Shown here: piece by piece, positions 40,041-57,414 of the stretch | Layout of the letters: every line of letters starts with the position of its first letter | Position numbering within the stretch: position 1 is the stretch's first letter | Virus record (IMG/VR): IMGVR_UViG_3300024054_000362 | Location: 62,001-126,000 of that record | Strand: one strand, 5' to 3' | Length of the DNA: 64,000 bases | Program-made: the position numbers and the translations under genes | Notes under the pieces: model-generated | Database searches by the model: none | Told to the model about the DNA's origin: nothing | Seen by the model: the letters and a program-made list of their open reading frames with translations, nothing else

Positions 40041-41924
40041 ATGAGCAAGTTTACCCCCGGCACCTACCGCCTGACCGTCGAGGTCGTGAACCCTACGCCC
40101 GATCGTCGCGTCAAGGACGATTGGCGCAAGCGCCCGACGGTCCCCAACGGGAAAATTTTCCGCGTGATCAGCATGTACTCGGGCATGGAGAACCCCGAGA
40201 CGGGTGAGGCGATCAGAATTGCCAAGCTCGTTCCCGTCGGAGATCGTTTCTGGATCCTACACGACGTCACGATCGACGGGCGCTACGAGCACAAGGAGCT
40301 GTGGACCGCGCCCGACGGTGCATGGCGCCTTGCCATGTGTCTCAATAACGACGCCAGCGACGATCGCGAAGAGGGTCTTGCAGACGTCGCGCTCGGGATC
40401 TTAAAGGGTACAAAAAAGCTCGTCGGGAACGAGAGCGGCATGAAGCTCGTCAAGGAGCACAAGAAGGTCACCGAGGCCTACTTGAAGCAGGTCGCGTTCA
40501 TCTACGCCGGCCGCATTCGCATCCGCGACAAGTGGTACCGCCCGATCGCGTACGTGACCAACTGCGGTCGACACGACATGCGCAACGATCACAACAAGCC
40601 TGTGTACCGTTGCCGGGACAACATGGGCTACGCCAACCGCGCGTGGCATTACGCCGGACCCGACGAAATCGTCTCCGAGAGCGCCACCTACCCCGACCCC
40701 GATCATCCCAGCATCAAGCGCGAGGTCATCTTCCGCGCCTGCGGCGACCGCCCCCACTGGCTGGACGTGCCGATCACCGAACAGGCCGCCGTCGACGAGT
40801 ACCTCGCGGCAGGACAGTTCCTTGAAGAGCGCAGCCACTCGATCATGTACCGCAACGAAGATGTGTCATCCGACGAGGAGACGCCGATCAATCGAAAGCG
40901 GATCCTCGCGCTCGGCGAGCGCGTCTCGCGCGAGCGCAAGGCCATCAAGAACGGCGACCTGACGCCGATGAACGCGCGCCTCAACGCTGAGCTGGAGCTA
41001 GCGCAGGTGCTCGACGAGGACGATCGTCCGATCGTGCAAGTGCTGCGCACCGACAAGGCGCCCAAGAAGAAGTCCGAAGCTCCGCTCGAAGAACATCTCG
41101 GTCCCGACACGCTCGCCTCCGTCCAGAAGAAGATCGTAGGTCTTCGTGAAGATTTGTACCTAGCCCGAGAGATCGACGACGAGGACGAGCGTGAGCTTGC
41201 CGAAGAACAAATCGAGCGCGAGTTGGAAGATCTGCGCGTGCGAGAACTTGCCGTGTTGCGCGAAGCGATTCTGAAACAGGCGAACGGCGATCTGATCGAT
41301 CTCACCTGGGACGCAGTCATGAAGACCCGCCCCCTCGACGGGGAGGAGGCTCGCATCCCTGCTGGCAGTATCAAGGTCCCGCGCGCGCCGTTCCTACACT
41401 GGGCGTTCGCTCGCATGAAGATGTTCGAGTCGCAACTCCCACCATGGAAATGCGTCTGCCCCTCAGGCATGAAGATGGCGATGGACGATCCGTTCCACAC
41501 CGACTGGGTCGTCGGTGGCGGTCTCGATCCACAGAACCGCGAACTACTCTACTACCCGGGTCCTGTTTGCGAAGCGTCGCTCAAACTCGCCCACGAGCTA
41601 CAGGACAAGTTCGATGCGCCTAGCGACGTGCACGTCCTCGTCGACGGTGCACCTGTCGGCGGCGCCATCCACCATGGCCGTAAGAAGAAACCGTGTCCCG
41701 ACGGTGCGATCGTCGTGCTCCCCAACCTGCATCCTGACTACGTCGAGACCATCGAGAACGCGGCGGCGGTCATCACCGAAGAAGGCGGCATGACGGCACA
41801 CCTCGCCCAGGTTGGTCGTGAGCGCGCTCTACCGATCGTCCGCATCGCGAACGCACGTACGCGCTTTCAGGAAGGCGACATGGTGGTGGTCAACACGGCG
41901 AACCGGACGGTAATGGGCGTATGA
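40041..41924 (+). CDS. multidomain protein with C-terminal PEP-utilising mobile (phospho-His) domain
   Basis: AAAVITEEGGMTAHLAQVGRERALPIV..EGDMVVVN. Confidence 0.7.
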   Translation: MSKFTPGTYRLTVEVVNPTPDRRVKDDWRKRPTVPNGKIFRVISMYSGMENPETGEAIRIAKLVPVGDRFWILHDVTIDGRYEHKELWTAPDGAWRLAMCLNNDASDDREEGLADVALGILKGTKKLVGNESGMKLVKEHKKVTEAYLKQVAFIYAGRIRIRDKWYRPIAYVTNCGRHDMRNDHNKPVYRCRDNMGYANRAWHYAGPDEIVSESATYPDPDHPSIKREVIFRACGDRPHWLDVPITEQAAVDEYLAAGQFLEERSHSIMYRNEDVSSDEETPINRKRILALGERVSRERKAIKNGDLTPMNARLNAELELAQVLDEDDRPIVQVLRTDKAPKKKSEAPLEEHLGPDTLASVQKKIVGLREDLYLAREIDDEDERELAEEQIERELEDLRVRELAVLREAILKQANGDLIDLTWDAVMKTRPLDGEEARIPAGSIKVPRAPFLHWAFARMKMFESQLPPWKCVCPSGMKMAMDDPFHTDWVVGGGLDPQNRELLYYPGPVCEASLKLAHELQDKFDAPSDVHVLVDGAPVGGAIHHGRKKKPCPDGAIVVLPNLHPDYVETIENAAAVITEEGGMTAHLAQVGRERALPIVRIANARTRFQEGDMVVVNTANRTVMGV

Positions 41925-43433
41925 ATCAGTTCTACGAGACGATCGCGAAGCTTTGTGAGCCCAAGACCCGTGCGCTGATTGCCTGCCAGATCCCATGCGG
42001 CGACGGTTGGATGGATCGAACGTACGAGGTCGTTCGGTCGCGCGACGGTCAGTGGATGGTCGACTTCGGCGCTGGCCCGCTCGAACCTCGACGGAGCTGG
42101 GAAGACATCCTGAACTGGCTCTGTCGCCTGTCGCCGCGCGACGTCGAGATGATGGAGGAGGAGCGCAGTGTTTTCGAGAAATCTGTACGAAGACGTTCCC
42201 GTGAACGAGGTCGAGCGCTTCTTATGGCGTGAGAAGCACGTACGCGGCTTCTTGACAAACATCCAACGCGAGCTGATTGATTCGGCACTCACGCGTGACG
42301 ATGTCGAACAGGCCAAAAAATTTCTGCGTGACTGGAAGGTTCTACGTGATGACGCTCGATGAGATGAAGACGCTGTACGTGAAGACGATGGGACCATCGT
42401 CGTTCGAGATCGAAGGCGACGGCCCGTTCACGGTGCGTGTCTACGACGGCATGGACCACTGTTGGTGCGATGTACTTGTCGGCGTCGATTTAGCGTTCGC
42501 GTTGCAGCGTTGGTGCAAGGAAACCAAGAACGGCACCGAGAAGACCTGCTTCGACGACATCGACTACTACCGGATCTTCCCGGCGAACACGCGCATGCTC
42601 AACCCTTGGGCCCGGGACGACTGATCGTGAAGATCTTGAAGGGCCGCGTCGACTGGCGGGAAGACGATCACACGGAACGCCCCGACGTTCTGCTCCTGGT
42701 TGATGCTGTTCCCGCACGCGAGGACATGCGTTTCGATCAACGAAACTACGCACTCAACAACGGCTGCCACCGTAGCGTCTTCTACGCCGAGGACGACGGC
42801 TTCTGTCGAGCGTTCTCGACAAGCATGGGAGTGTTCGAAGAGGAACCTCGCTCGGTAGTCGGCCGTACGACTTGGCGACCGATCACGATGCACGATGGCT
42901 CACGTCGGTGGGCATCTACTTCGACCGTCGCACCGTCCGGTTTTCGTCTCAACGATCTAGGTTTCGGCCCGTGCATGCCGATTCGCTATACGACCTGCGA
43001 ACATCGCTACCGACAAGGACACGCGCTGACGGGCTGGGTGCTCGTCTCGAAGCTTCGCGCGAATGCACATCTGATCGACGTCGGAGAAGGCTATAGCTGG
43101 CGACCCGGCCTCGCTTCAGCTGCTGGCGTCGTCTTCCCCGGAGGTAGTCGGTTCTCGTTGGCGTGCTGTGCCGCTGGGAACGAGTACAGCAGCACCGGGT
43201 ATCGAAGCGAAAAGCGAATCGTCACCGATCGTTTCCCTGACGGCGTTCTCGTCGAAGACGCCCGCAACGCCATCCAAGCTTCGCTTGCTGCAGGACACGC
43301 GAACGTCGCGAAGGAAATCGCCGACCGCTACGTCCGTTACTTGGGGGCGAACGCAACTGGTGTCCTACTGACCTTGCTGAGCTACGAGCCGGCTGTCAAG
43401 CTGCCAGACGGCACGTTTTGGGTCCGCCCATAG
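41921..43433 (+). other. cluster of hypothetical genes (41921-42232, 42349-42624, 42627-43433)
   Basis: co-oriented abutting ORFs. Confidence 0.5.
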
Positions 43434-43592
43434 GGGCCCCTCAAGAGCTTTCTCGTCGAAGATCGCCTCACCGCCAACAGGTCGATCGCTGATGCGATAA
43501 AGCTCTTGACAAGTCGCGCGAGCGATCGCAGACTCGTCGCTGACACGATCGAGCTACGGCCCGCGGGGCCAAACTAGGGAGCCACGAAGAAC

Positions 43593-44687
43593 ATGCCACT
43601 GTCGTTCGAGAAGACCGAGCAAGCACTGCTCGCTTGCGTCAAGACCCAGATCACGCCCGTCGTCGTCGGACCGCCCGGAATCGGCAAGACGGCGATCGTC
43701 CGCGCCGTCGGCGTCAAGGCCAAGCTGCCGGTGCACGAGCTGTTGGCATCGAACTGCGACGCCGTCGACATCGCCGGTTTCCCGTTCGTCGATGCCAAGA
43801 CCGCAACGCTGAAGCGCGCACTGCTGCCGGAGATCGAAGCCTGTGTCAAGGCGCCCGGCATCCTGTTCCTGGACGAACTGACGGCTGTCCCGCCGAGCGT
43901 ACAGGGGCCGCTGATGCGGCTGCTCCTCGAACGATACGCAGGTGGGACTCGTCTGCACCCCGAGAGTTGCGTCGTCGGCGCCGCCAACCGTCCCGAAGAG
44001 TGTCCCGGCGGCATCGAATTGTCGGCAGCCAGCATCAACCGCGTGATCAAGATGGTCGATTTCATGCCGACCCTCGACGAGATCCGTGGCTACTTCGAGC
44101 GTGTCGGCGATGCTGGTACGCGTCTCCACGAGGAGATGGTCGATTTCGCAGCCACGCTCGCGGTCAACGCAGACCTTCTCGACATGTCGCCACCACGCGC
44201 GTCGATCGATGCCGGTGCGCCGTTCGCGTCGCCGCGCGCGTGGGATCGAGGACTCACGGTGTACGCCAGCTACTGCGACGCGGCCAAGGTTGGATTCAAC
44301 CTCGGTCAGAACGAGGATGACGTCGGCTTCGCGCTGCTCTCCGGCGCTGTGGGGGAGACCAAGGCGGTCGCGTTCTTCGCGATCCGCAAGATGCGCAAGC
44401 ATCTACCGAGCATCGACGACATCCTCAACGATCCTGTGAAGGCCAAGGTCCCAGAGAAGAAGGACCAGCAGATCGCAGCCGTTGGGCTCATCGCGCGCGT
44501 CGCCGAGAAGGATCTCTGGGCGTCATGGATCTACGTCGAGCGCCTCCTGCCCGAGATCAGTGCCGCGTGCGCGCGTGTCCTCATGACCAAGAACGACCCC
44601 GGCAAGTCGAAGTGGCTCATGCAAGGCAAGAACGCGCAGGTCAACGGCCTCGCTGCGATTCATCGTAGCATGAACACCAAGCCGTAA
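43593..44687 (+). CDS. MoxR-like AAA+ ATPase
   Basis: GPPGIGKT, LFLDEL, GAANRP, SPRAW. Confidence 0.88.
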   Translation: MPLSFEKTEQALLACVKTQITPVVVGPPGIGKTAIVRAVGVKAKLPVHELLASNCDAVDIAGFPFVDAKTATLKRALLPEIEACVKAPGILFLDELTAVPPSVQGPLMRLLLERYAGGTRLHPESCVVGAANRPEECPGGIELSAASINRVIKMVDFMPTLDEIRGYFERVGDAGTRLHEEMVDFAATLAVNADLLDMSPPRASIDAGAPFASPRAWDRGLTVYASYCDAAKVGFNLGQNEDDVGFALLSGAVGETKAVAFFAIRKMRKHLPSIDDILNDPVKAKVPEKKDQQIAAVGLIARVAEKDLWASWIYVERLLPEISAACARVLMTKNDPGKSKWLMQGKNAQVNGLAAIHRSMNTKP

Positions 44688-44710
44688 CTCAGCTCGTAGG
44701 AGCGCCGTCC

Positions 44711-46024
44711 ATGTCCAATCGCAACAAGAGCCCCCATCAGGTCAACACGTCGACGGAAAAGCCGCTGCGGCCTCGCGTGGTTGATCCGGCTGTTGCGGCG
44801 GCACTGATTTCACGGTGCAAGGCCAACGCACTGTATTTGGGATGGAAACAGACGCCGTTTTTCCTGCCCGCGGTAGGACGCGTCGAGTTCCGTCCCACAA
44901 CAGAAATCCCGACCGCGGCTGTTGATTTGCGTGGACGGATCTACGTCAACGTCGATTTCGCTGCCAAGCTGAAGGACGCTGAGCTGCAGTTCGTGATCGC
45001 ACACGAGCTGATGCACCTCCTGTTGCTCCACCACGATCGTCGTGGACACCGCGATCGACTGAAGTGGAACATCGCCACCGACCTGATCATCAACCGTACG
45101 CTCAAGGACGTTGCTGACGCTGTCGGCGCGGGCGCGTTCGAGATGCCCAAGGTGGGACTGATCGCCGACGAGAGCCAGGCTGGCTTGACTGCAGAACAGC
45201 TCTACGCCGACATCCCAGATCCGCCGGCCGAGATGCGCGCAGCCTTTGAGGCTGGGACAATCCCCGTCGGCCAAGGGTGTGGTGTCGACGACGGCACCGA
45301 TCCCAACGGCAACCCGGATCCCGATGATCCGGACGGTCAAGAAGCCAAGACGCCCGACCAGCTCAAGCGTGATTGGCAGGAGTGTGCGGTCCAGTGTCAG
45401 ATGCAAGGCCGTCAAGCTGGTGATGTCGCAGGCAACATGCTCGCCGACATTCTCGACGTTCCCGATCCTCTCGTGCGCTGGTCCGAGGTTCTGCGTGGTG
45501 CGCTTCTCCGTGCCATCGCCGAAGCCGGCCGCGACGATGTGTCGTGGCGACGCCGCTCGCGACGTAGCACGGTGGAGTTCATCCTACCTGGCGGCGTCAA
45601 CTACCGCTGCAAGGCAGCCGTCGTGATCGATGCGTCCGGATCGGTCGACGATGAAGCTCTTGCACGCTGTACCGCCGAGACCACGGCCATCGTCAACCAC
45701 TGTGGCGTCGCAGTCTTTCTCGTCGTTCACGATCACGCCGTACAGTCTGCTACCTGGATCCGTCCTGGCGTCAAGTCCAAGGTCCATCAGGACATCAAGA
45801 AGGAAATGAAAGGCCGTGGCGGTACCAGCTTCGACGAGGCGTATGATCGTGTTCAAGAAGAAGGCGAAAAGTTCAACGTCATGGTCCACCTGACTGATGC
45901 AGAAATCGGCGGTGTGTGGCCTCCACGTCCATCGTCGGTACGGCGCCTCGTCGTCGCACTGGTGGGTTCGGCTTGCAAAGACAACTGTCCGCCGGATGCA
46001 CGCGTCATCGAAGTCGAAATCTGA
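44711..46024 (+). CDS. HEXXH metallopeptidase-like + vWA protein (DUF2201-like)
   Basis: IPTAAVD, HELMH, WNIATDLIIN, IDASGS, GRGGTSF, HLTD. Confidence 0.85.
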   Translation: MSNRNKSPHQVNTSTEKPLRPRVVDPAVAAALISRCKANALYLGWKQTPFFLPAVGRVEFRPTTEIPTAAVDLRGRIYVNVDFAAKLKDAELQFVIAHELMHLLLLHHDRRGHRDRLKWNIATDLIINRTLKDVADAVGAGAFEMPKVGLIADESQAGLTAEQLYADIPDPPAEMRAAFEAGTIPVGQGCGVDDGTDPNGNPDPDDPDGQEAKTPDQLKRDWQECAVQCQMQGRQAGDVAGNMLADILDVPDPLVRWSEVLRGALLRAIAEAGRDDVSWRRRSRRSTVEFILPGGVNYRCKAAVVIDASGSVDDEALARCTAETTAIVNHCGVAVFLVVHDHAVQSATWIRPGVKSKVHQDIKKEMKGRGGTSFDEAYDRVQEEGEKFNVMVHLTDAEIGGVWPPRPSSVRRLVVALVGSACKDNCPPDARVIEVEI

Positions 46025-54191: not shown

Positions 54192-54347
54192 GCTTGCTGC
54201 GCCCGACCACGTGCTCTCGTTCAGCATGGTCCCGAACGACATGCTCTTCATCGACAACACGGCGATCGCGCACGATCGCGACGCCTATATCGATGATCCG
54301 ACCGCGCCGCGTCTCATGTTGAGGCTCTGGCTATCCGAGAGGCAGCC

Positions 54348-54779
54348 ATGACCGACACGAACGACGATCCCCCGAGCGAGATCCTTCCAGGCCAGCTTTA
54401 CATGGGTAGACACCAGCAGCCCGGCACGTTGACTGCGTTCGACGTCGTCATCGGCGTGTCGAAACAGAAGCCGGTCTACGTCATCGATCATCCACATGCG
54501 ATCGTCATCCACGTCCCACTTCAAGACGAAGGACCGCCAACGCCAGAAGAGCGTGTTGCCGCCCGCGCGGCGGCCCAACTTGTCAACCAACACATCGACG
54601 CCGGCAAGAAGGTCTACGTGAGCTGTTCGATGGGCCAGAATCGATCCGGCTGGGTCGTCGGTTTGGCGCTCCGCGCTCGCGGCTACTCTGGCGTAGCGGC
54701 GGTCTTGTTGATGCGTGAACGGCGAAGCTACGCAGTGCTCAACAACGAGTTCTTCGAGCGCGACGTGAAGCGAGACTGA
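54348..54779 (+). CDS. dual-specificity phosphatase-like protein
   Basis: SEILPGQLYMG, PLQD, VYVSCSMGQNRS (Cx5R). Confidence 0.85.
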   Translation: MTDTNDDPPSEILPGQLYMGRHQQPGTLTAFDVVIGVSKQKPVYVIDHPHAIVIHVPLQDEGPPTPEERVAARAAAQLVNQHIDAGKKVYVSCSMGQNRSGWVVGLALRARGYSGVAAVLLMRERRSYAVLNNEFFERDVKRD

Positions 54780-55005
54780 TCATGGAGACGCACATCTCGT
54801 TCTGCGACCGCGTGACCGGCGTCGTTCTCTACGGCGTGAACGGTTCCTTCGATCATCTTCCGCGACAACATGAGCACGTGCTCGTCGAGCACGTTCGCTA
54901 CACCGTCGATCGCGTTGAATGGTGGTTCGACTTCACGAACGATCGTGTTGTAGTCAAGGTTCTCATCGGCAAGCTCATGGACGAACCCGAACGAAAGGAG
55001 CGCAC

Positions 55006-55248
55006 GTGAAGAAGACCATCAAGAAGCTGACCCTCAAGACCGAGACCATCAAGCAACTCAACGACGTCCAGCTCGGACAGGTCGCTGGAGGTATGACCGG
55101 TAGTATCTGTGTTGGGTGCTCGGGAACCGTGTGCCCAAGCGGCGGCCAGAACCCGTGCCCGCAGAGCGTGACGCTGTGTTCCGGCCTCAACTGCACCGCC
55201 AACACATGCGTCACGGCGTGTGGGAGTTGTCAGGGGTGCAACGGGTGA
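55006..55248 (+). CDS. Cys-rich double-glycine RiPP (lanthipeptide-like) precursor
   Basis: AAGGAG RBS; leader KKLTLKTETIKQL..QLGQVAGG; core with 10 Cys and many Ser/Thr. Confidence 0.75.
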   Translation: MKKTIKKLTLKTETIKQLNDVQLGQVAGGMTGSICVGCSGTVCPSGGQNPCPQSVTLCSGLNCTANTCVTACGSCQGCNG

Positions 55249-55423
55249 GAACAGGCGTTCCCGTCGGGATCGTGATCGTCTCCCGTCGGGACGGTGATCG
55301 TCTCCGTCGGGATCACCGTCCCGGCCGGAATCAGAATCGCCGGGATGACCTCGAACCATGTCGAGTGCGCCGCGCAGCGGCCGGTCTGAGCCGCACAGTC
55401 GCGACAGAAACGCCATGGCTCGG

Positions 55424-56080: not shown

Positions 56081-56365
56081 TCAGGTTGTAAGTCGTCCCC
56101 AGTCGTCGAGCTGCACGAATTCGTGGAACGTACATGGTGGGAACGGACAGACATACGACGGCGACACCGTGCCGTCATCGGCGACCGTGTGGTTGTGACC
56201 GACCATCGAGACTTTCTTGCAGATCGGGCAGGCACACTCCGCCCAGAAACGCTGCGTCGGCGTCTTCAGGTGATATGCCTTCCACATCTCGGCGATGCGG
56301 CGATACGTACCCGGCACCGTCGGGAGATCGTGATCATTCGCGACGCGTCGGAACAGGAACATCAC
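56081..56365 (-). CDS. small Zn-binding protein
   Basis: CPIC..H..VSPSYVCPFPPCTFH. Confidence 0.5.
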   Translation of the reverse strand: MMFLFRRVANDHDLPTVPGTYRRIAEMWKAYHLKTPTQRFWAECACPICKKVSMVGHNHTVADDGTVSPSYVCPFPPCTFHEFVQLDDWGRLTT

Positions 56366-56407
56366 TTCGCCTGATCGTCGGGATCGACCGGCAAGCCGGG
56401 CAGTTTC

Positions 56408-57061
56408 TCACGACACTTGGGACAGACCATCGTGAGCGTCGACTTGCCGAGCCGACCTCCGGCGCCGATCCAGCCGTAATGAATTTTCAGAAAGCGCATC
56501 ACGAACGCGCGCGGATCTGAGACGTGCCTGCCGAATGCGAAGTCCCCGCTCTTGATCAGTTGCTCCTTGGCGTACTGAACGTCGACCTTGACGCGTGCCC
56601 TGCACTCGCACTGAACGGTGACCACGGCCACACACTGTACCGCGTGACGGGCGTAGCGCGACGCGATCAACGAGCCAGACGATTCCTTCGACGGCGACAC
56701 CGAGGATGCCCCACAAGAGACCGTGATCGAGATCGATGCAGCCGGCCCACGGGTTCGCGCAATTCTGATTCGAGTAGTCCCACGAGCACGATCCGAAGAC
56801 GCGACGGTTGATCTGACAACCGGCGAATTCAACGCCCGTCAACAACGCTGAGTAGATCGGCACGCGCACGATCCATGGCAGCTTGTCGAGGTACGGCCGC
56901 GTCGCCATGATGGTCATGCCGCCGAAGGCGTACACAGGAAGAAACGGGATTTGGACGCCGTCGAAGACCGTCGAAAAGCGCGGTCCGAAGAAGACATTCT
57001 CTAGTGTCCAGCCGCCAACGCCGAACAGCGTTCCCTGGAGCGCAAGTTCGGCGGCGTCCAT
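56408..57061 (-). CDS. CmpB/DUF1113-like membrane protein
   Basis: GWTLE, PFLPVYAFG, TGVEF, WDYS, AGCI; 3' end uncertain. Confidence 0.6.
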   Translation of the reverse strand: MDAAELALQGTLFGVGGWTLENVFFGPRFSTVFDGVQIPFLPVYAFGGMTIMATRPYLDKLPWIVRVPIYSALLTGVEFAGCQINRRVFGSCSWDYSNQNCANPWAGCIDLDHGLLWGILGVAVEGIVWLVDRVALRPSRGTVCGRGHRSVRVQGTRQGRRSVRQGATDQERGLRIRQARLRSARVRDALSENSLRLDRRRRSARQVDAHDGLSQVS

Positions 57062-57414
57062 CAGTGCACCGTCTCCTCGACGAACATGCTCTTGCCCGTC
57101 TTCACATCGCAGTGCGCGCAGCCCCACGCTGGGATGTCTTCACAGCCTGGCGTCGCCGTGATCACGGTGTCGATCGTGTATTCGTGTTCGAGACGCGTGA
57201 AACTGCAGCGGCCGGTCAGGATGCGCACGATGTCCCAGGCCATGAAGACGGCGCCTTCGGGTGTCGGATCACATCCGATCTGAACGCCGCACGAGAGGCC
57301 GATAATCTTGGCAACCCACAAGTTGTCATCGCCGATCGACTTCTCGACGACGATCGTGAACGGCTGCTTGATGTCGATCAGGCCCTTGTCGATACGGCGG
57401 CGCACGTCATCCAT
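57061..57414 (-). CDS. HicB-like protein
   Basis: FTIVVEK..WVAKI..TPEGAVFMAWD. Confidence 0.4.
   Translation of the reverse strand: MDDVRRRIDKGLIDIKQPFTIVVEKSIGDDNLWVAKIIGLSCGVQIGCDPTPEGAVFMAWDIVRILTGRCSFTRLEHEYTIDTVITATPGCEDIPAWGCAHCDVKTGKSMFVEETVH

What the first reader, a model, noticed from the sequence alone, without database searches (positions are those of the whole stretch)
55006..55248. Orphan lanthipeptide-like precursor in a viral genome
Seen: leader MKKTIKKLTLKTETIKQLNDVQLGQVAGG and a 51-aa core with 10 Cys and 12 Ser/Thr; no LanB/C/M, radical SAM or peptidase-transporter gene in the window. Established: KKLxL..ET...L leaders ending in GG typify RiPP precursors. Inference: the virus borrows host maturation/export enzymes to make its own modified peptide, or decoys them.
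Basis: partly seen in the sequence, partly recalled or inferred. Interest (0 to 1): 0.65.

Follow-up and report, generated by a model that had tools for sequence, protein, structure and literature searches.

The report
Phage-borne lanthipeptide-type precursor without synthetase
A 221-kb lake-water jumbo phage carries a real gene for a lantibiotic-style precursor peptide but none of the enzymes that would modify it, so it most likely relies on the host's peptide-modifying enzymes.

Summary
Window 55006-55248 (+) encodes an 80-aa peptide with a GTG start, an AAGGAG ribosome-binding site and a GTGA overlap with the upstream ORF. Its 29-aa leader passes the curated cut-off of NCBIfam NF038153 (class I lanthipeptide leader L1a). 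It has the canonical double-glycine pattern (V-4, L-7, L-12, I-15, GG). The uncharged 51-aa core has 10 Cys and 12 Ser/Thr.

The window lies in a CheckV-complete 221,422-bp virus record. Searches for LanB, LanC, protein and APH kinases, radical SAM, YcaO and an ABC ATPase found nothing convincing. The record does encode a membrane-anchored stand-alone C39 double-glycine peptidase, 50 kb outside the window. That peptidase is a core gene of the phage clade, and relatives that carry it lack the peptide.

The peptide is an accessory gene in a variable slot. A distantly related phage-like contig carries a homologue (dN/dS 0.29). The nearest named-genome relatives are in Acidobacteriota genomes. One of them holds 23 such leaders, 18 of them far from any LanB or LanC, so orphan precursors are normal for this family.

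Best reading: a phage-supplied substrate for trans-acting host maturation. Modification, cleavage, host and function remain untested.

The parts
55006..55248 (+). Precursor peptide gene, 80 aa plus stop
   Evidence: ORF and translation. It was also called as an 80-aa gene on 11 metagenome contigs. NF038153 scores 24.9 bits against a cut-off of 22. Homologous small peptides exist elsewhere.
55006..55092 (+). Double-glycine leader, 29 aa, ending AGG. Hydrophobic residues sit at -4 (V), -7 (L), -12 (L) and -15 (I).
   Evidence: Sequence. Leader HMM match covers residues 1-29. M1, K2, K3, L8, L10, T14, L23, V26, G28 and G29 are invariant across 7 family members.
55093..55245 (+). Core peptide, 51 aa: 10 Cys, 6 Ser, 6 Thr, 9 Gly, no charged residue. 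S/T-x3-C spacing occurs five times.
   Evidence: Composition count. The GG-x-T-[GA]-... start and the CP motif are shared with relatives.
54995..55000 (+). Shine-Dalgarno AAGGAG, 5 nt before the GTG start
   Evidence: Read directly from the sequence.
54782..55009 (+). Upstream 75-aa ORF of unknown function. Its stop overlaps the precursor start (GTGA), so the two are probably translationally coupled.
   Evidence: No Pfam family. The Atlas gave only unnamed small-protein clusters. The AlphaFold model was too poor to use, at pLDDT 48.
55281..55329 (.). Inverted repeat (19-nt arms, 15 perfect pairs, 11-nt loop) 33 nt after the stop, between convergent genes. It looks like a terminator but has no T-tract.
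   Evidence: The whole-region z-score is only -1.69, so this is weak evidence.

Best explanation
The ORF is a genuine, translated accessory gene (a 'moron') of a lake-water jumbo phage. It encodes a double-glycine-leader precursor of the class I lanthipeptide L1a leader family.

The phage has no dehydratase or cyclase. I therefore infer that the peptide is made during infection or lysogeny and matured in trans by host enzymes. A host LanB/LanC-type system would dehydrate Ser/Thr and cyclise the 10 Cys onto the dehydro residues. The leader would then be cut after Gly29, either by a host peptidase-ABC exporter or by the phage's own membrane-anchored C39 peptidase. The product would leave the cell by export or simply at lysis.

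The leader acts as the adaptor to host enzymes that, in bacteria with this family, already serve many dispersed precursors with one conserved leader and hypervariable cores.

Shown:
- gene reality and leader family membership
- double-glycine architecture
- absence of synthetase domains on the phage
- presence of a catalytically intact C39 on the phage
- accessory status of the gene
- orphan precursors being the norm in one bacterial genome

Inferred:
- trans-maturation
- who cleaves the leader
- host identity (Acidobacteriota-like, weak)
- the product's role (antimicrobial, anti-rival-phage or signalling)
For: Gene reality: SD, GTGA coupling and frame. The NF038153 match is above cut-off and unique in the genome. 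Six homologous peptides have an invariant leader skeleton.

Selection: dN/dS is 0.29 over 33 codons against the copy on L021. L021 is a contig that shares three proteins with this phage.

Link to lanthipeptide chemistry: homologue P0003 sits directly upstream of a LanC gene scoring 106 bits. Several L1a leaders in genomes G004-G006 abut stand-alone LanC genes.

Trans-acting precedent: G004, G005 and G006 have 40, 18 and 29 leader matches. They also carry 5-10 LanC domains, 3 LanB matches each and PCAT-type C39 genes. In G004, 18 of 23 above-cut-off leaders have no LanB/LanC within 50 kb or on the same contig.

No synthetase on the phage: LANC_like, Lant_dehydr_N, Lant_dehydr_C, Pkinase, APH, Radical_SAM and YcaO all gave no match. 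ABC_tran gave only a sub-threshold 15.5-bit hit. The same tool found LanB and LanC in G004-G006.

Phage C39: PF03412 scores 60.6 bits. It aligns to the ComA peptidase domain (3K8U) with Gln, Cys, His and Asp in place, and these are invariant in 12 homologues.

Accessory status: relative G407 shares 131 of 291 proteins at a median 56% identity, is 90% complete and lacks the peptide. The syntenic slot there holds other cargo.
Against: - There is no direct evidence of expression. No RNA run holds the stretch.
- All 11 contigs are essentially identical, so there is no population signal.
- The host is unknown. Only 6 of 401 sampled Acidobacteriota genomes match the peptide, and no close C39 or prophage of this clade was found among them.
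- The C39 peptidase occurs in four related phage records that lack any L1a leader. It therefore has some other primary role.
- A neutral, 51-aa, 10-Cys core is atypical for characterised class I lantibiotics (my knowledge).
- The leader score is only 3 bits above the cut-off.
Confidence: 0.5

Rival explanations
1. The peptide is an unmodified, disulfide-rich double-glycine-leader peptide, like a class II bacteriocin or a signal. The leader only directs cleavage (phage C39 or host PCAT) and release, the 10 Cys form disulfides outside the cell, and no lanthionine is made.
For: The phage supplies a protease but no modifying enzyme. Double-glycine leaders are shared by unmodified bacteriocins (established knowledge). 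The even Cys count of 10 allows five disulfides.
Against: The leader matches a lanthipeptide-specific leader model above its cut-off. Relatives abut LanC genes. Ser/Thr (12) match or exceed Cys (10), with repeated S/T-x3-C spacing, as expected for thioether rings.
Confidence: 0.2
2. The peptide is a decoy or competitive inhibitor. It occupies the leader-binding sites of the host LanB/LanC or PCAT and blocks production or export of the host's own lanthipeptides, for example anti-phage ones, without itself needing to be an active product.
For: The leader is the best-conserved part. Lanthipeptides with anti-phage function have been reported (bioRxiv 10.1101/2024.06.26.600839; review PMC12360287). 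An unusually long core with 22 modifiable residues could tie up enzymes.
Against: The core keeps family features (GG-x-T-G-S-x-C start, CP motif, balance of Cys and Ser/Thr) that a decoy would not need. The second phage-borne copy also has a full Cys/Thr-rich core. No evidence ties the unknown host's lanthipeptides to defence.
Confidence: 0.12
3. The gene is neutral passenger DNA, a host precursor gene recently captured in a variable slot, with no role for the phage.
For: It lies in a hypervariable slot and is absent from the closest complete relative. Only one clonal phage population carries it.
Against: It has an intact SD and translational coupling to a phage ORF. Its 61% GC context resembles the phage rather than the roughly 67-68% GC of the three Thermoanaerobaculia loci. 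A second phage-like contig carries a homologue, with dN/dS of 0.29. The phage has been found in lake-water metagenomes from 2018 to 2025.
Confidence: 0.12
4. A host radical-SAM/SPASM maturase modifies the peptide (a ranthipeptide or sactipeptide-like Cys thioether), not a LanB/LanC pair.
For: There is a weak match to TIGR04149, the rSAM-target GG leader (11.1 bits). Cys-rich GG-leader precursors are known to be ambiguous between rSAM and class I lanthipeptide classes (PMC11118758).
Against: The TIGR04149 score is far below its cut-off of 25, while the L1a model passes. Neighbours of bacterial relatives are LanC, not rSAM.
Confidence: 0.05

Closest known systems
Class I lanthipeptide precursors with L1a-type leader (NCBIfam NF038153)
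   Same: The leader passes the curated cut-off. It has the MKKxxKKLxLxxETIxxL...GG skeleton, and the core is rich in Cys and Ser/Thr.
   Different: No LanB or LanC is on the same replicon. The gene is carried by a phage. The core is longer (51 aa) than in the relatives found (about 19-40 aa) and is uncharged.
Prochlorosins (ProcA precursors / ProcM) of marine cyanobacteria
   Same: The logic is the same: many dispersed precursors with one conserved double-glycine leader and hypervariable cores, served in trans by shared enzymes. I saw this pattern for the L1a family in genome G004.
   Different: The leader family differs (Nif11/NHLP versus L1a) and the enzyme class differs (class II ProcM). 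This comparison rests on my knowledge and on a mention in PMC11118758. No phage-borne member turned up in the one literature search I made.
Sublancin locus of prophage SPbeta (sunA-sunT-bdbA-sunS-bdbB)
   Same: It is a phage-borne, Cys-rich, double-glycine-leader peptide (my knowledge, not tested here).
   Different: SPbeta carries the whole pathway: modifying enzyme, PCAT exporter and oxidoreductases. This phage carries only the precursor and an unlinked stand-alone C39.
C39 peptidase domain of ComA / PCAT exporters (PDB 3K8U, 5XE8)
   Same: The phage's 204-aa protein aligns over about 125 residues with the catalytic Gln, Cys, His and Asp conserved. The precursor leader has the -4/-7/-12/-15 hydrophobic pattern such domains recognise (established knowledge).
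   Different: It is stand-alone, tail-anchored by one C-terminal helix and not fused to an ABC transporter. It is a core gene of the phage clade regardless of whether the peptide is present.
Phage arbitrium peptides (AimP)
   Same: A phage-encoded small peptide that depends on host proteins for processing (my knowledge).
   Different: There is no sequence or architectural similarity. AimP uses a Sec signal and extracellular proteases, and has no Cys-rich core.

Membership tests
Class I lanthipeptide precursor, L1a leader (NF038153) | Leader matches the family HMM at or above the curated cut-off | tested here: met
   24.9 bits against a cut-off of 22, residues 1-29. It is the single match in the genome.
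Class I lanthipeptide precursor, L1a leader (NF038153) | Core contains Cys plus Ser/Thr able to form (methyl)lanthionine | tested here: met
   10 Cys, 6 Ser and 6 Thr in 51 aa.
Class I lanthipeptide precursor, L1a leader (NF038153) | LanB dehydratase and LanC cyclase encoded with the precursor | tested here: not met
   No LANC_like, Lant_dehydr_N or Lant_dehydr_C in the 221-kb record. The tool finds these families in G004-G006.
Class I lanthipeptide precursor, L1a leader (NF038153) | Product carries dehydro residues and thioether rings | not testable with these tools
   This needs mass spectrometry of the native or co-expressed peptide.
Double-glycine leader peptides (C39 substrates) | GG (or GA/GS) at -2/-1 with hydrophobic residues at -4, -7, -12 and -15 | tested here: met
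   V-4, L-7, L-12, I-15 and G-2 G-1, read from the sequence. The pattern scan finds no other convincing case in the genome.
Double-glycine leader peptides (C39 substrates) | A catalytically competent C39 peptidase is available in the same genome | tested here: met
   PF03412 scores 60.6 bits. Gln21/22, Cys28, His112 and Asp128 are invariant. The gene is unlinked, about 50 kb away and outside the window.
Double-glycine leader peptides (C39 substrates) | Cleavage after GG by that peptidase | not testable with these tools
   This needs an in vitro cleavage assay.
PCAT (peptidase-containing ABC transporter) | C39 domain fused to an ABC membrane domain and ATPase | tested here: not met
   The phage protein is 204 aa with one C-terminal helix. 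The only ABC_tran hit is 15.5 bits, below the cut-off.
Class II-V lanthipeptide systems (LanM, LanKC, LanL, class V kinase) | LanC-like domain and/or a protein or APH-type kinase on the element | tested here: not met
   No LANC_like, Pkinase or APH match.
rSAM-modified GG-leader RiPP (TIGR04149) | Leader HMM above cut-off, plus a radical SAM maturase | tested here: not met
   11.1 bits against a cut-off of 25. No Radical_SAM in the genome.
Linear azole peptides / TOMM | YcaO cyclodehydratase | tested here: not met
   No YcaO match at E <= 1.

The most novel reading that the evidence does not exclude
Phages can plug their own precursor genes into a host's promiscuous lanthipeptide machinery. 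A viral leader acts as a passkey, so the infected cell makes a virus-specified, heavily cross-linked peptide. The phage would use it against competing bacteria or rival phages, and the clade's own tail-anchored C39 peptidase would free it without any exporter. Two diverged phage lineages would have kept such genes.
Probability: 0.35. Interest if true: 0.75.

Novelty: new variant of a known kind. Interest (0 to 1): 0.55.

Why it matters
RiPP mining normally starts from the enzymes, so precursors on mobile elements that lack enzymes go unseen. A virus that supplies only the substrate would be a cheap way (243 bp) to reprogram a host's secondary metabolism. It would also show that conserved leaders make RiPP pathways open to hijacking. 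The case is directly testable: co-express one small gene with candidate LanB/LanC enzymes and measure the mass. Separately, a tail-anchored double-glycine peptidase conserved across a jumbo-phage clade raises the question of what phages cut with it.

Tried and rejected
- Complex prediction of the C39 domain (residues 1-165) with the precursor (residues 1-45) gave no verdict (score 0.02). It is not evidence either way.
- The AlphaFold2 model of the coupled 75-aa ORF had pLDDT 48 and was unusable, so I ran no fold search.
- The word-index search with the peptide found only itself.
- The IMG/VR scan with the peptide found no relative.
- tblastn against 50,697 GenBank phage records found no hit at E <= 1, with the low-complexity filter on.
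- Population variation gave nothing: five contigs are 99.96-100% identical.
- No RNA run holds the stretch. I did not use read laying, because only DNA contigs were on offer.
- Host assignment through the C39 gene failed. Only 30-34% identical stand-alone C39s occur in 8 of 401 sampled Acidobacteriota genomes.
- Virus Rctr197k shares a 58% identical 624-aa protein. It shares only 5 proteins with this phage over the roughly 108 kb of it that I fetched, so it is not a close relative.
- Antisense ORF 54975-55214 has a higher GC3 (0.76 against 0.67). I rejected it because leader homology, the SD and the gene calls all support the + frame.
- The long 109-aa reading from ATG 54919 was rejected, because homologues start at MKK and that stretch overlaps the upstream gene.
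- Literature searches found no report of a phage-borne orphan lanthipeptide precursor. This is not proof that none exists.

Full report
**1. The observation**

Window 55006-55248 (+) is an 80-codon ORF starting at GTG. AAGGAG lies at 54995-55000, 5 nt upstream. The TGA of the upstream 75-aa ORF (54782-55009) overlaps the start as GTGA, which is typical of translational coupling. The gene closes a long run of + strand genes. It faces convergent - strand genes across a 19-nt-arm inverted repeat at 55281-55329.

The product has a 29-aa leader, (M)KKTIKKLTLKTETIKQLNDVQLGQVAGG, and a 51-aa core. The core has 10 Cys, 6 Ser, 6 Thr, 9 Gly and no charged residue.

Cys-richness by itself is not special in this 61% GC genome. 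Five off-frame open stretches are as rich or richer. The leader is what makes the ORF stand out:
- It scores 24.9 bits on NCBIfam NF038153, lant_leader_L1a, 'class I lanthipeptide' (curated cut-off 22).
- It is the only match in the whole genome.
- Fourteen control genomes give no above-cut-off match.
- Reading back from the GG gives V-4, L-7, L-12 and I-15. This is the spacing recognised by C39 double-glycine peptidases (established knowledge from ComC/ComA work).
- A generic scan for that pattern finds no other credible case in the phage.

Pfam and PHROGs have no model that matches.

**2. The replicon**

The window is G000:C1:62001-126000 of a 221,422-bp IMG/VR virus record, rated 100% complete by CheckV, linear, 61% GC. 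The record carries:
- 13 tRNAs
- a DNA polymerase with a LAGLIDADG insert, and both ribonucleotide reductase subunits
- SNF2 and other helicases, a primase, a thymidylate-synthase-like gene and a terminase-large-subunit-like gene (phrog_2666, E 1.4e-17)
- a tyrosine recombinase near 60.8-61.7 kb of the window

The stretch is present in at least 11 lake-water metagenome runs from 2018-2025. No run is recorded as RNA. Five contigs that carry the peptide are 99.96-100% identical.

**3. Enzymes on the element**

The following family searches of the whole record found nothing:
- LANC_like
- Lant_dehydr_N
- Lant_dehydr_C
- Pkinase
- APH
- Radical_SAM
- YcaO

ABC_tran gave only a 15.5-bit sub-threshold hit. 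The same tool finds LanB and LanC readily in bacterial genomes. Signature domains of lanthipeptide classes I-V are therefore not detectable.

One relevant enzyme does exist, outside the window. G000:C1:166508-167122 (-) encodes a 204-aa Peptidase_C39 (PF03412 60.6 bits, PF13529 44.7 bits). It aligns to the ComA peptidase domain (3K8U/5XE8, E 2e-5) with the oxyanion Gln and the catalytic Cys, His and Asp in place. It ends in a single hydrophobic helix followed by RRRR. An M23 peptidase with a similar C-terminal helix lies next to it.

**4. Is the C39 peptidase the peptide's partner?**

The C39 has 57 homologous clusters at 48-100% identity. All 12 aligned members are about 200 aa, with the C-terminal helix and with Gln21/22, Cys28, His112 and Asp128 invariant. 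Many sit on contigs of 90-241 kb.

In IMG/VR it occurs in four other records: G001, G003, G407 and G408. None has an L1a leader at E <= 1. A 595-kb huge phage with a distant C39 has none either.

G407 is the best comparison. It is 195.8 kb, 90% complete, and shares 131 of 291 predicted proteins with this phage at a median 56% identity. It has no double-glycine Cys-rich ORF. The syntenic slot between the homologues of the flanking genes holds unrelated cargo.

The C39 is therefore a clade core gene with some other primary role, and the peptide is an accessory gene in a variable slot. The C39 could still cleave this leader, but the data do not show it.

**5. Relatives of the peptide**

The word-index search found only the peptide itself. 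Exhaustive HMMER over 1.84 billion representatives found six small peptides at 35.6-42.6 bits. They share MKKxxKKLxLxxETxxxL...V.GG followed by x-T-[GA]-... and a Cys/Thr-rich core.

- **P0004** (56% identical) lies on L021, a 13.5-kb, 62.6% GC contig. Three of its proteins resemble proteins of this phage at 29-43% identity. L021 is thus a second, distant phage-like carrier. Over 33 aligned codons, dN/dS is 0.29 with dS near 1. This argues for protein-level constraint in the + frame.
- **P0003** sits directly upstream of a LanC gene (106 bits).
- **P0006** is an orphan among metabolic genes on a 65-kb bacterial contig.

A scan of species genomes with a leader pattern confirmed three loci, all in Thermoanaerobaculia (Acidobacteriota) MAGs. 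The ESM Atlas neighbour is an Aminicenantota cluster carrying PF28317 Lant_leader_dom (score 0.88, a lead only).

**6. The bacterial setting of the family**

The three MAGs hold 40, 18 and 29 L1a matches at E <= 0.1, about 50 of them above the cut-off. They also hold:
- 5-10 LanC domains each, some inside roughly 1,100-aa LanM-sized ORFs
- three LanB matches each
- one to three PCAT-type C39 matches each, in open frames of roughly 600-940 aa

Several leaders abut stand-alone LanC genes: G006:C156, G006:C187, G005:C182 and G004:C9. In G004, whose contigs are long, 18 of 23 above-cut-off leaders have no LanB/LanC within 50 kb or on the same contig.

Leaders are conserved and cores are hypervariable. 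This is the prochlorosin-like logic of shared enzymes acting in trans. The trait is patchy:
- 6 of 401 sampled Acidobacteriota genomes match the phage peptide.
- 6 of 121 genomes in the class of G004 have a strong leader match, and only two of them show large expansions.

**7. Interpretation**

What the feature is, I hold with high confidence: a real double-glycine, L1a-type lanthipeptide-style precursor gene carried as an accessory gene by a jumbo phage.

How it works is inference. The phage lacks any synthetase, and orphan precursors are the norm for this family. The most economical model is therefore trans-maturation by host LanB/LanC-type enzymes. Leader removal would be by a host PCAT or the phage C39, and release by export or lysis.

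Four rivals remain:
- an unmodified disulfide peptide
- a decoy for the host's RiPP enzymes, which is notable because anti-phage lanthipeptides are now known (bioRxiv 10.1101/2024.06.26.600839; PMC12360287)
- neutral cargo
- maturation by a host radical SAM enzyme

The host remains unknown. The Acidobacteriota lead rests only on leader similarity. Searches for this clade's C39 in 401 genomes of that phylum found only 30-34% identical proteins.

**8. Novelty**

Neither the GenBank phage collection nor my literature searches turned up a phage-borne precursor-only lanthipeptide gene. The peptide class is known, and prophage-borne complete bacteriocin loci are known (SPbeta sublancin, from my own knowledge). 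The variant here is a virus that carries only the substrate. I rate it a new variant of a known kind, of moderate interest and readily testable.

Noticed in passing
outside the window: G000:C1:166508-167122 (-) = L002:1330-1944 (-): A stand-alone, tail-anchored C39 double-glycine peptidase is a conserved core gene of this jumbo-phage clade. There are 57 clusters at 48-100% identity, on contigs up to 241 kb. Its substrate in phages without GG-leader peptides is unknown.
   Followed up: partly
outside the window: L002:741-1328 (-): An M23 peptidase (40 bits) with a similar C-terminal hydrophobic helix lies directly downstream of the C39 gene. It is not next to the C39 in L020, and the tblastn comparison at E <= 1e-10 did not find it in G407.
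   Followed up: partly
window 54211-54351 (+): A 46-aa ORF looks like the C-terminal remnant of a TauD/TfdA-type dioxygenase (weak PF02668 hit in the precomputed gene table). It is probably a decayed gene fragment, and it lies two genes upstream of the precursor.
   Followed up: no
window 54348-54779 (+): A dual-specificity phosphatase (DSPc, 36 bits; phrog_10650) lies two genes upstream of the precursor. Its homologue in G407 sits at an unrelated locus, so it is probably not linked to the peptide.
   Followed up: partly
window 56362-57127 (-): Two overlapping frames both look real. 56408-57127 matches PF06541 ABC_trans_CmpB, a small membrane protein (44 bits). 56362-56832 has a 61% identical counterpart in G407. 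JGI called the identical DNA differently on two contigs. This may be a frameshift or a fused gene.
   Followed up: no
window 55259-55302: Two tandem 22-nt direct repeats (91% identical) overlap the inverted repeat downstream of the precursor gene. A third, partial copy of a 16-nt unit follows.
   Followed up: no
outside the window: L015:5583-9335 (-) and L015:12719-14698 (-): The DNA polymerase (1,251 aa) carries a LAGLIDADG homing-endonuclease-like insert at residues 239-415. The ribonucleotide reductase small subunit (660 aa) has a roughly 330-aa insert. Both look like inteins.
   Followed up: no
L069:16330-16962 (+) (relative G407): The slot that holds the precursor in this phage holds other cargo in G407. 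One item is a 210-aa protein with a GGQ motif, like a peptide-chain release factor or ArfB. Another is a 425-aa Gly-rich protein.
   Followed up: no
L025:3-4532: In this bacterial locus a Ser/Thr protein kinase and an FHA-sigma54 activator precede an L1a precursor (P0003) and a stand-alone LanC. No LanB lies within 8.6 kb.
   Followed up: partly
window 40041-46024 (+): A 627-aa protein with a PEP-utilising mobile domain (phrog_11532) is followed by a MoxR-like AAA ATPase and a DUF2201 metallopeptidase/VWA protein. Their function in the phage is unknown.
   Followed up: no
outside the window: G000:C1:59285-59678: Five tRNA-Leu genes with five different anticodons lie in tandem. They are part of 13 phage tRNAs, none of which is tRNA-Glu, Cys or Thr.
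   Followed up: no
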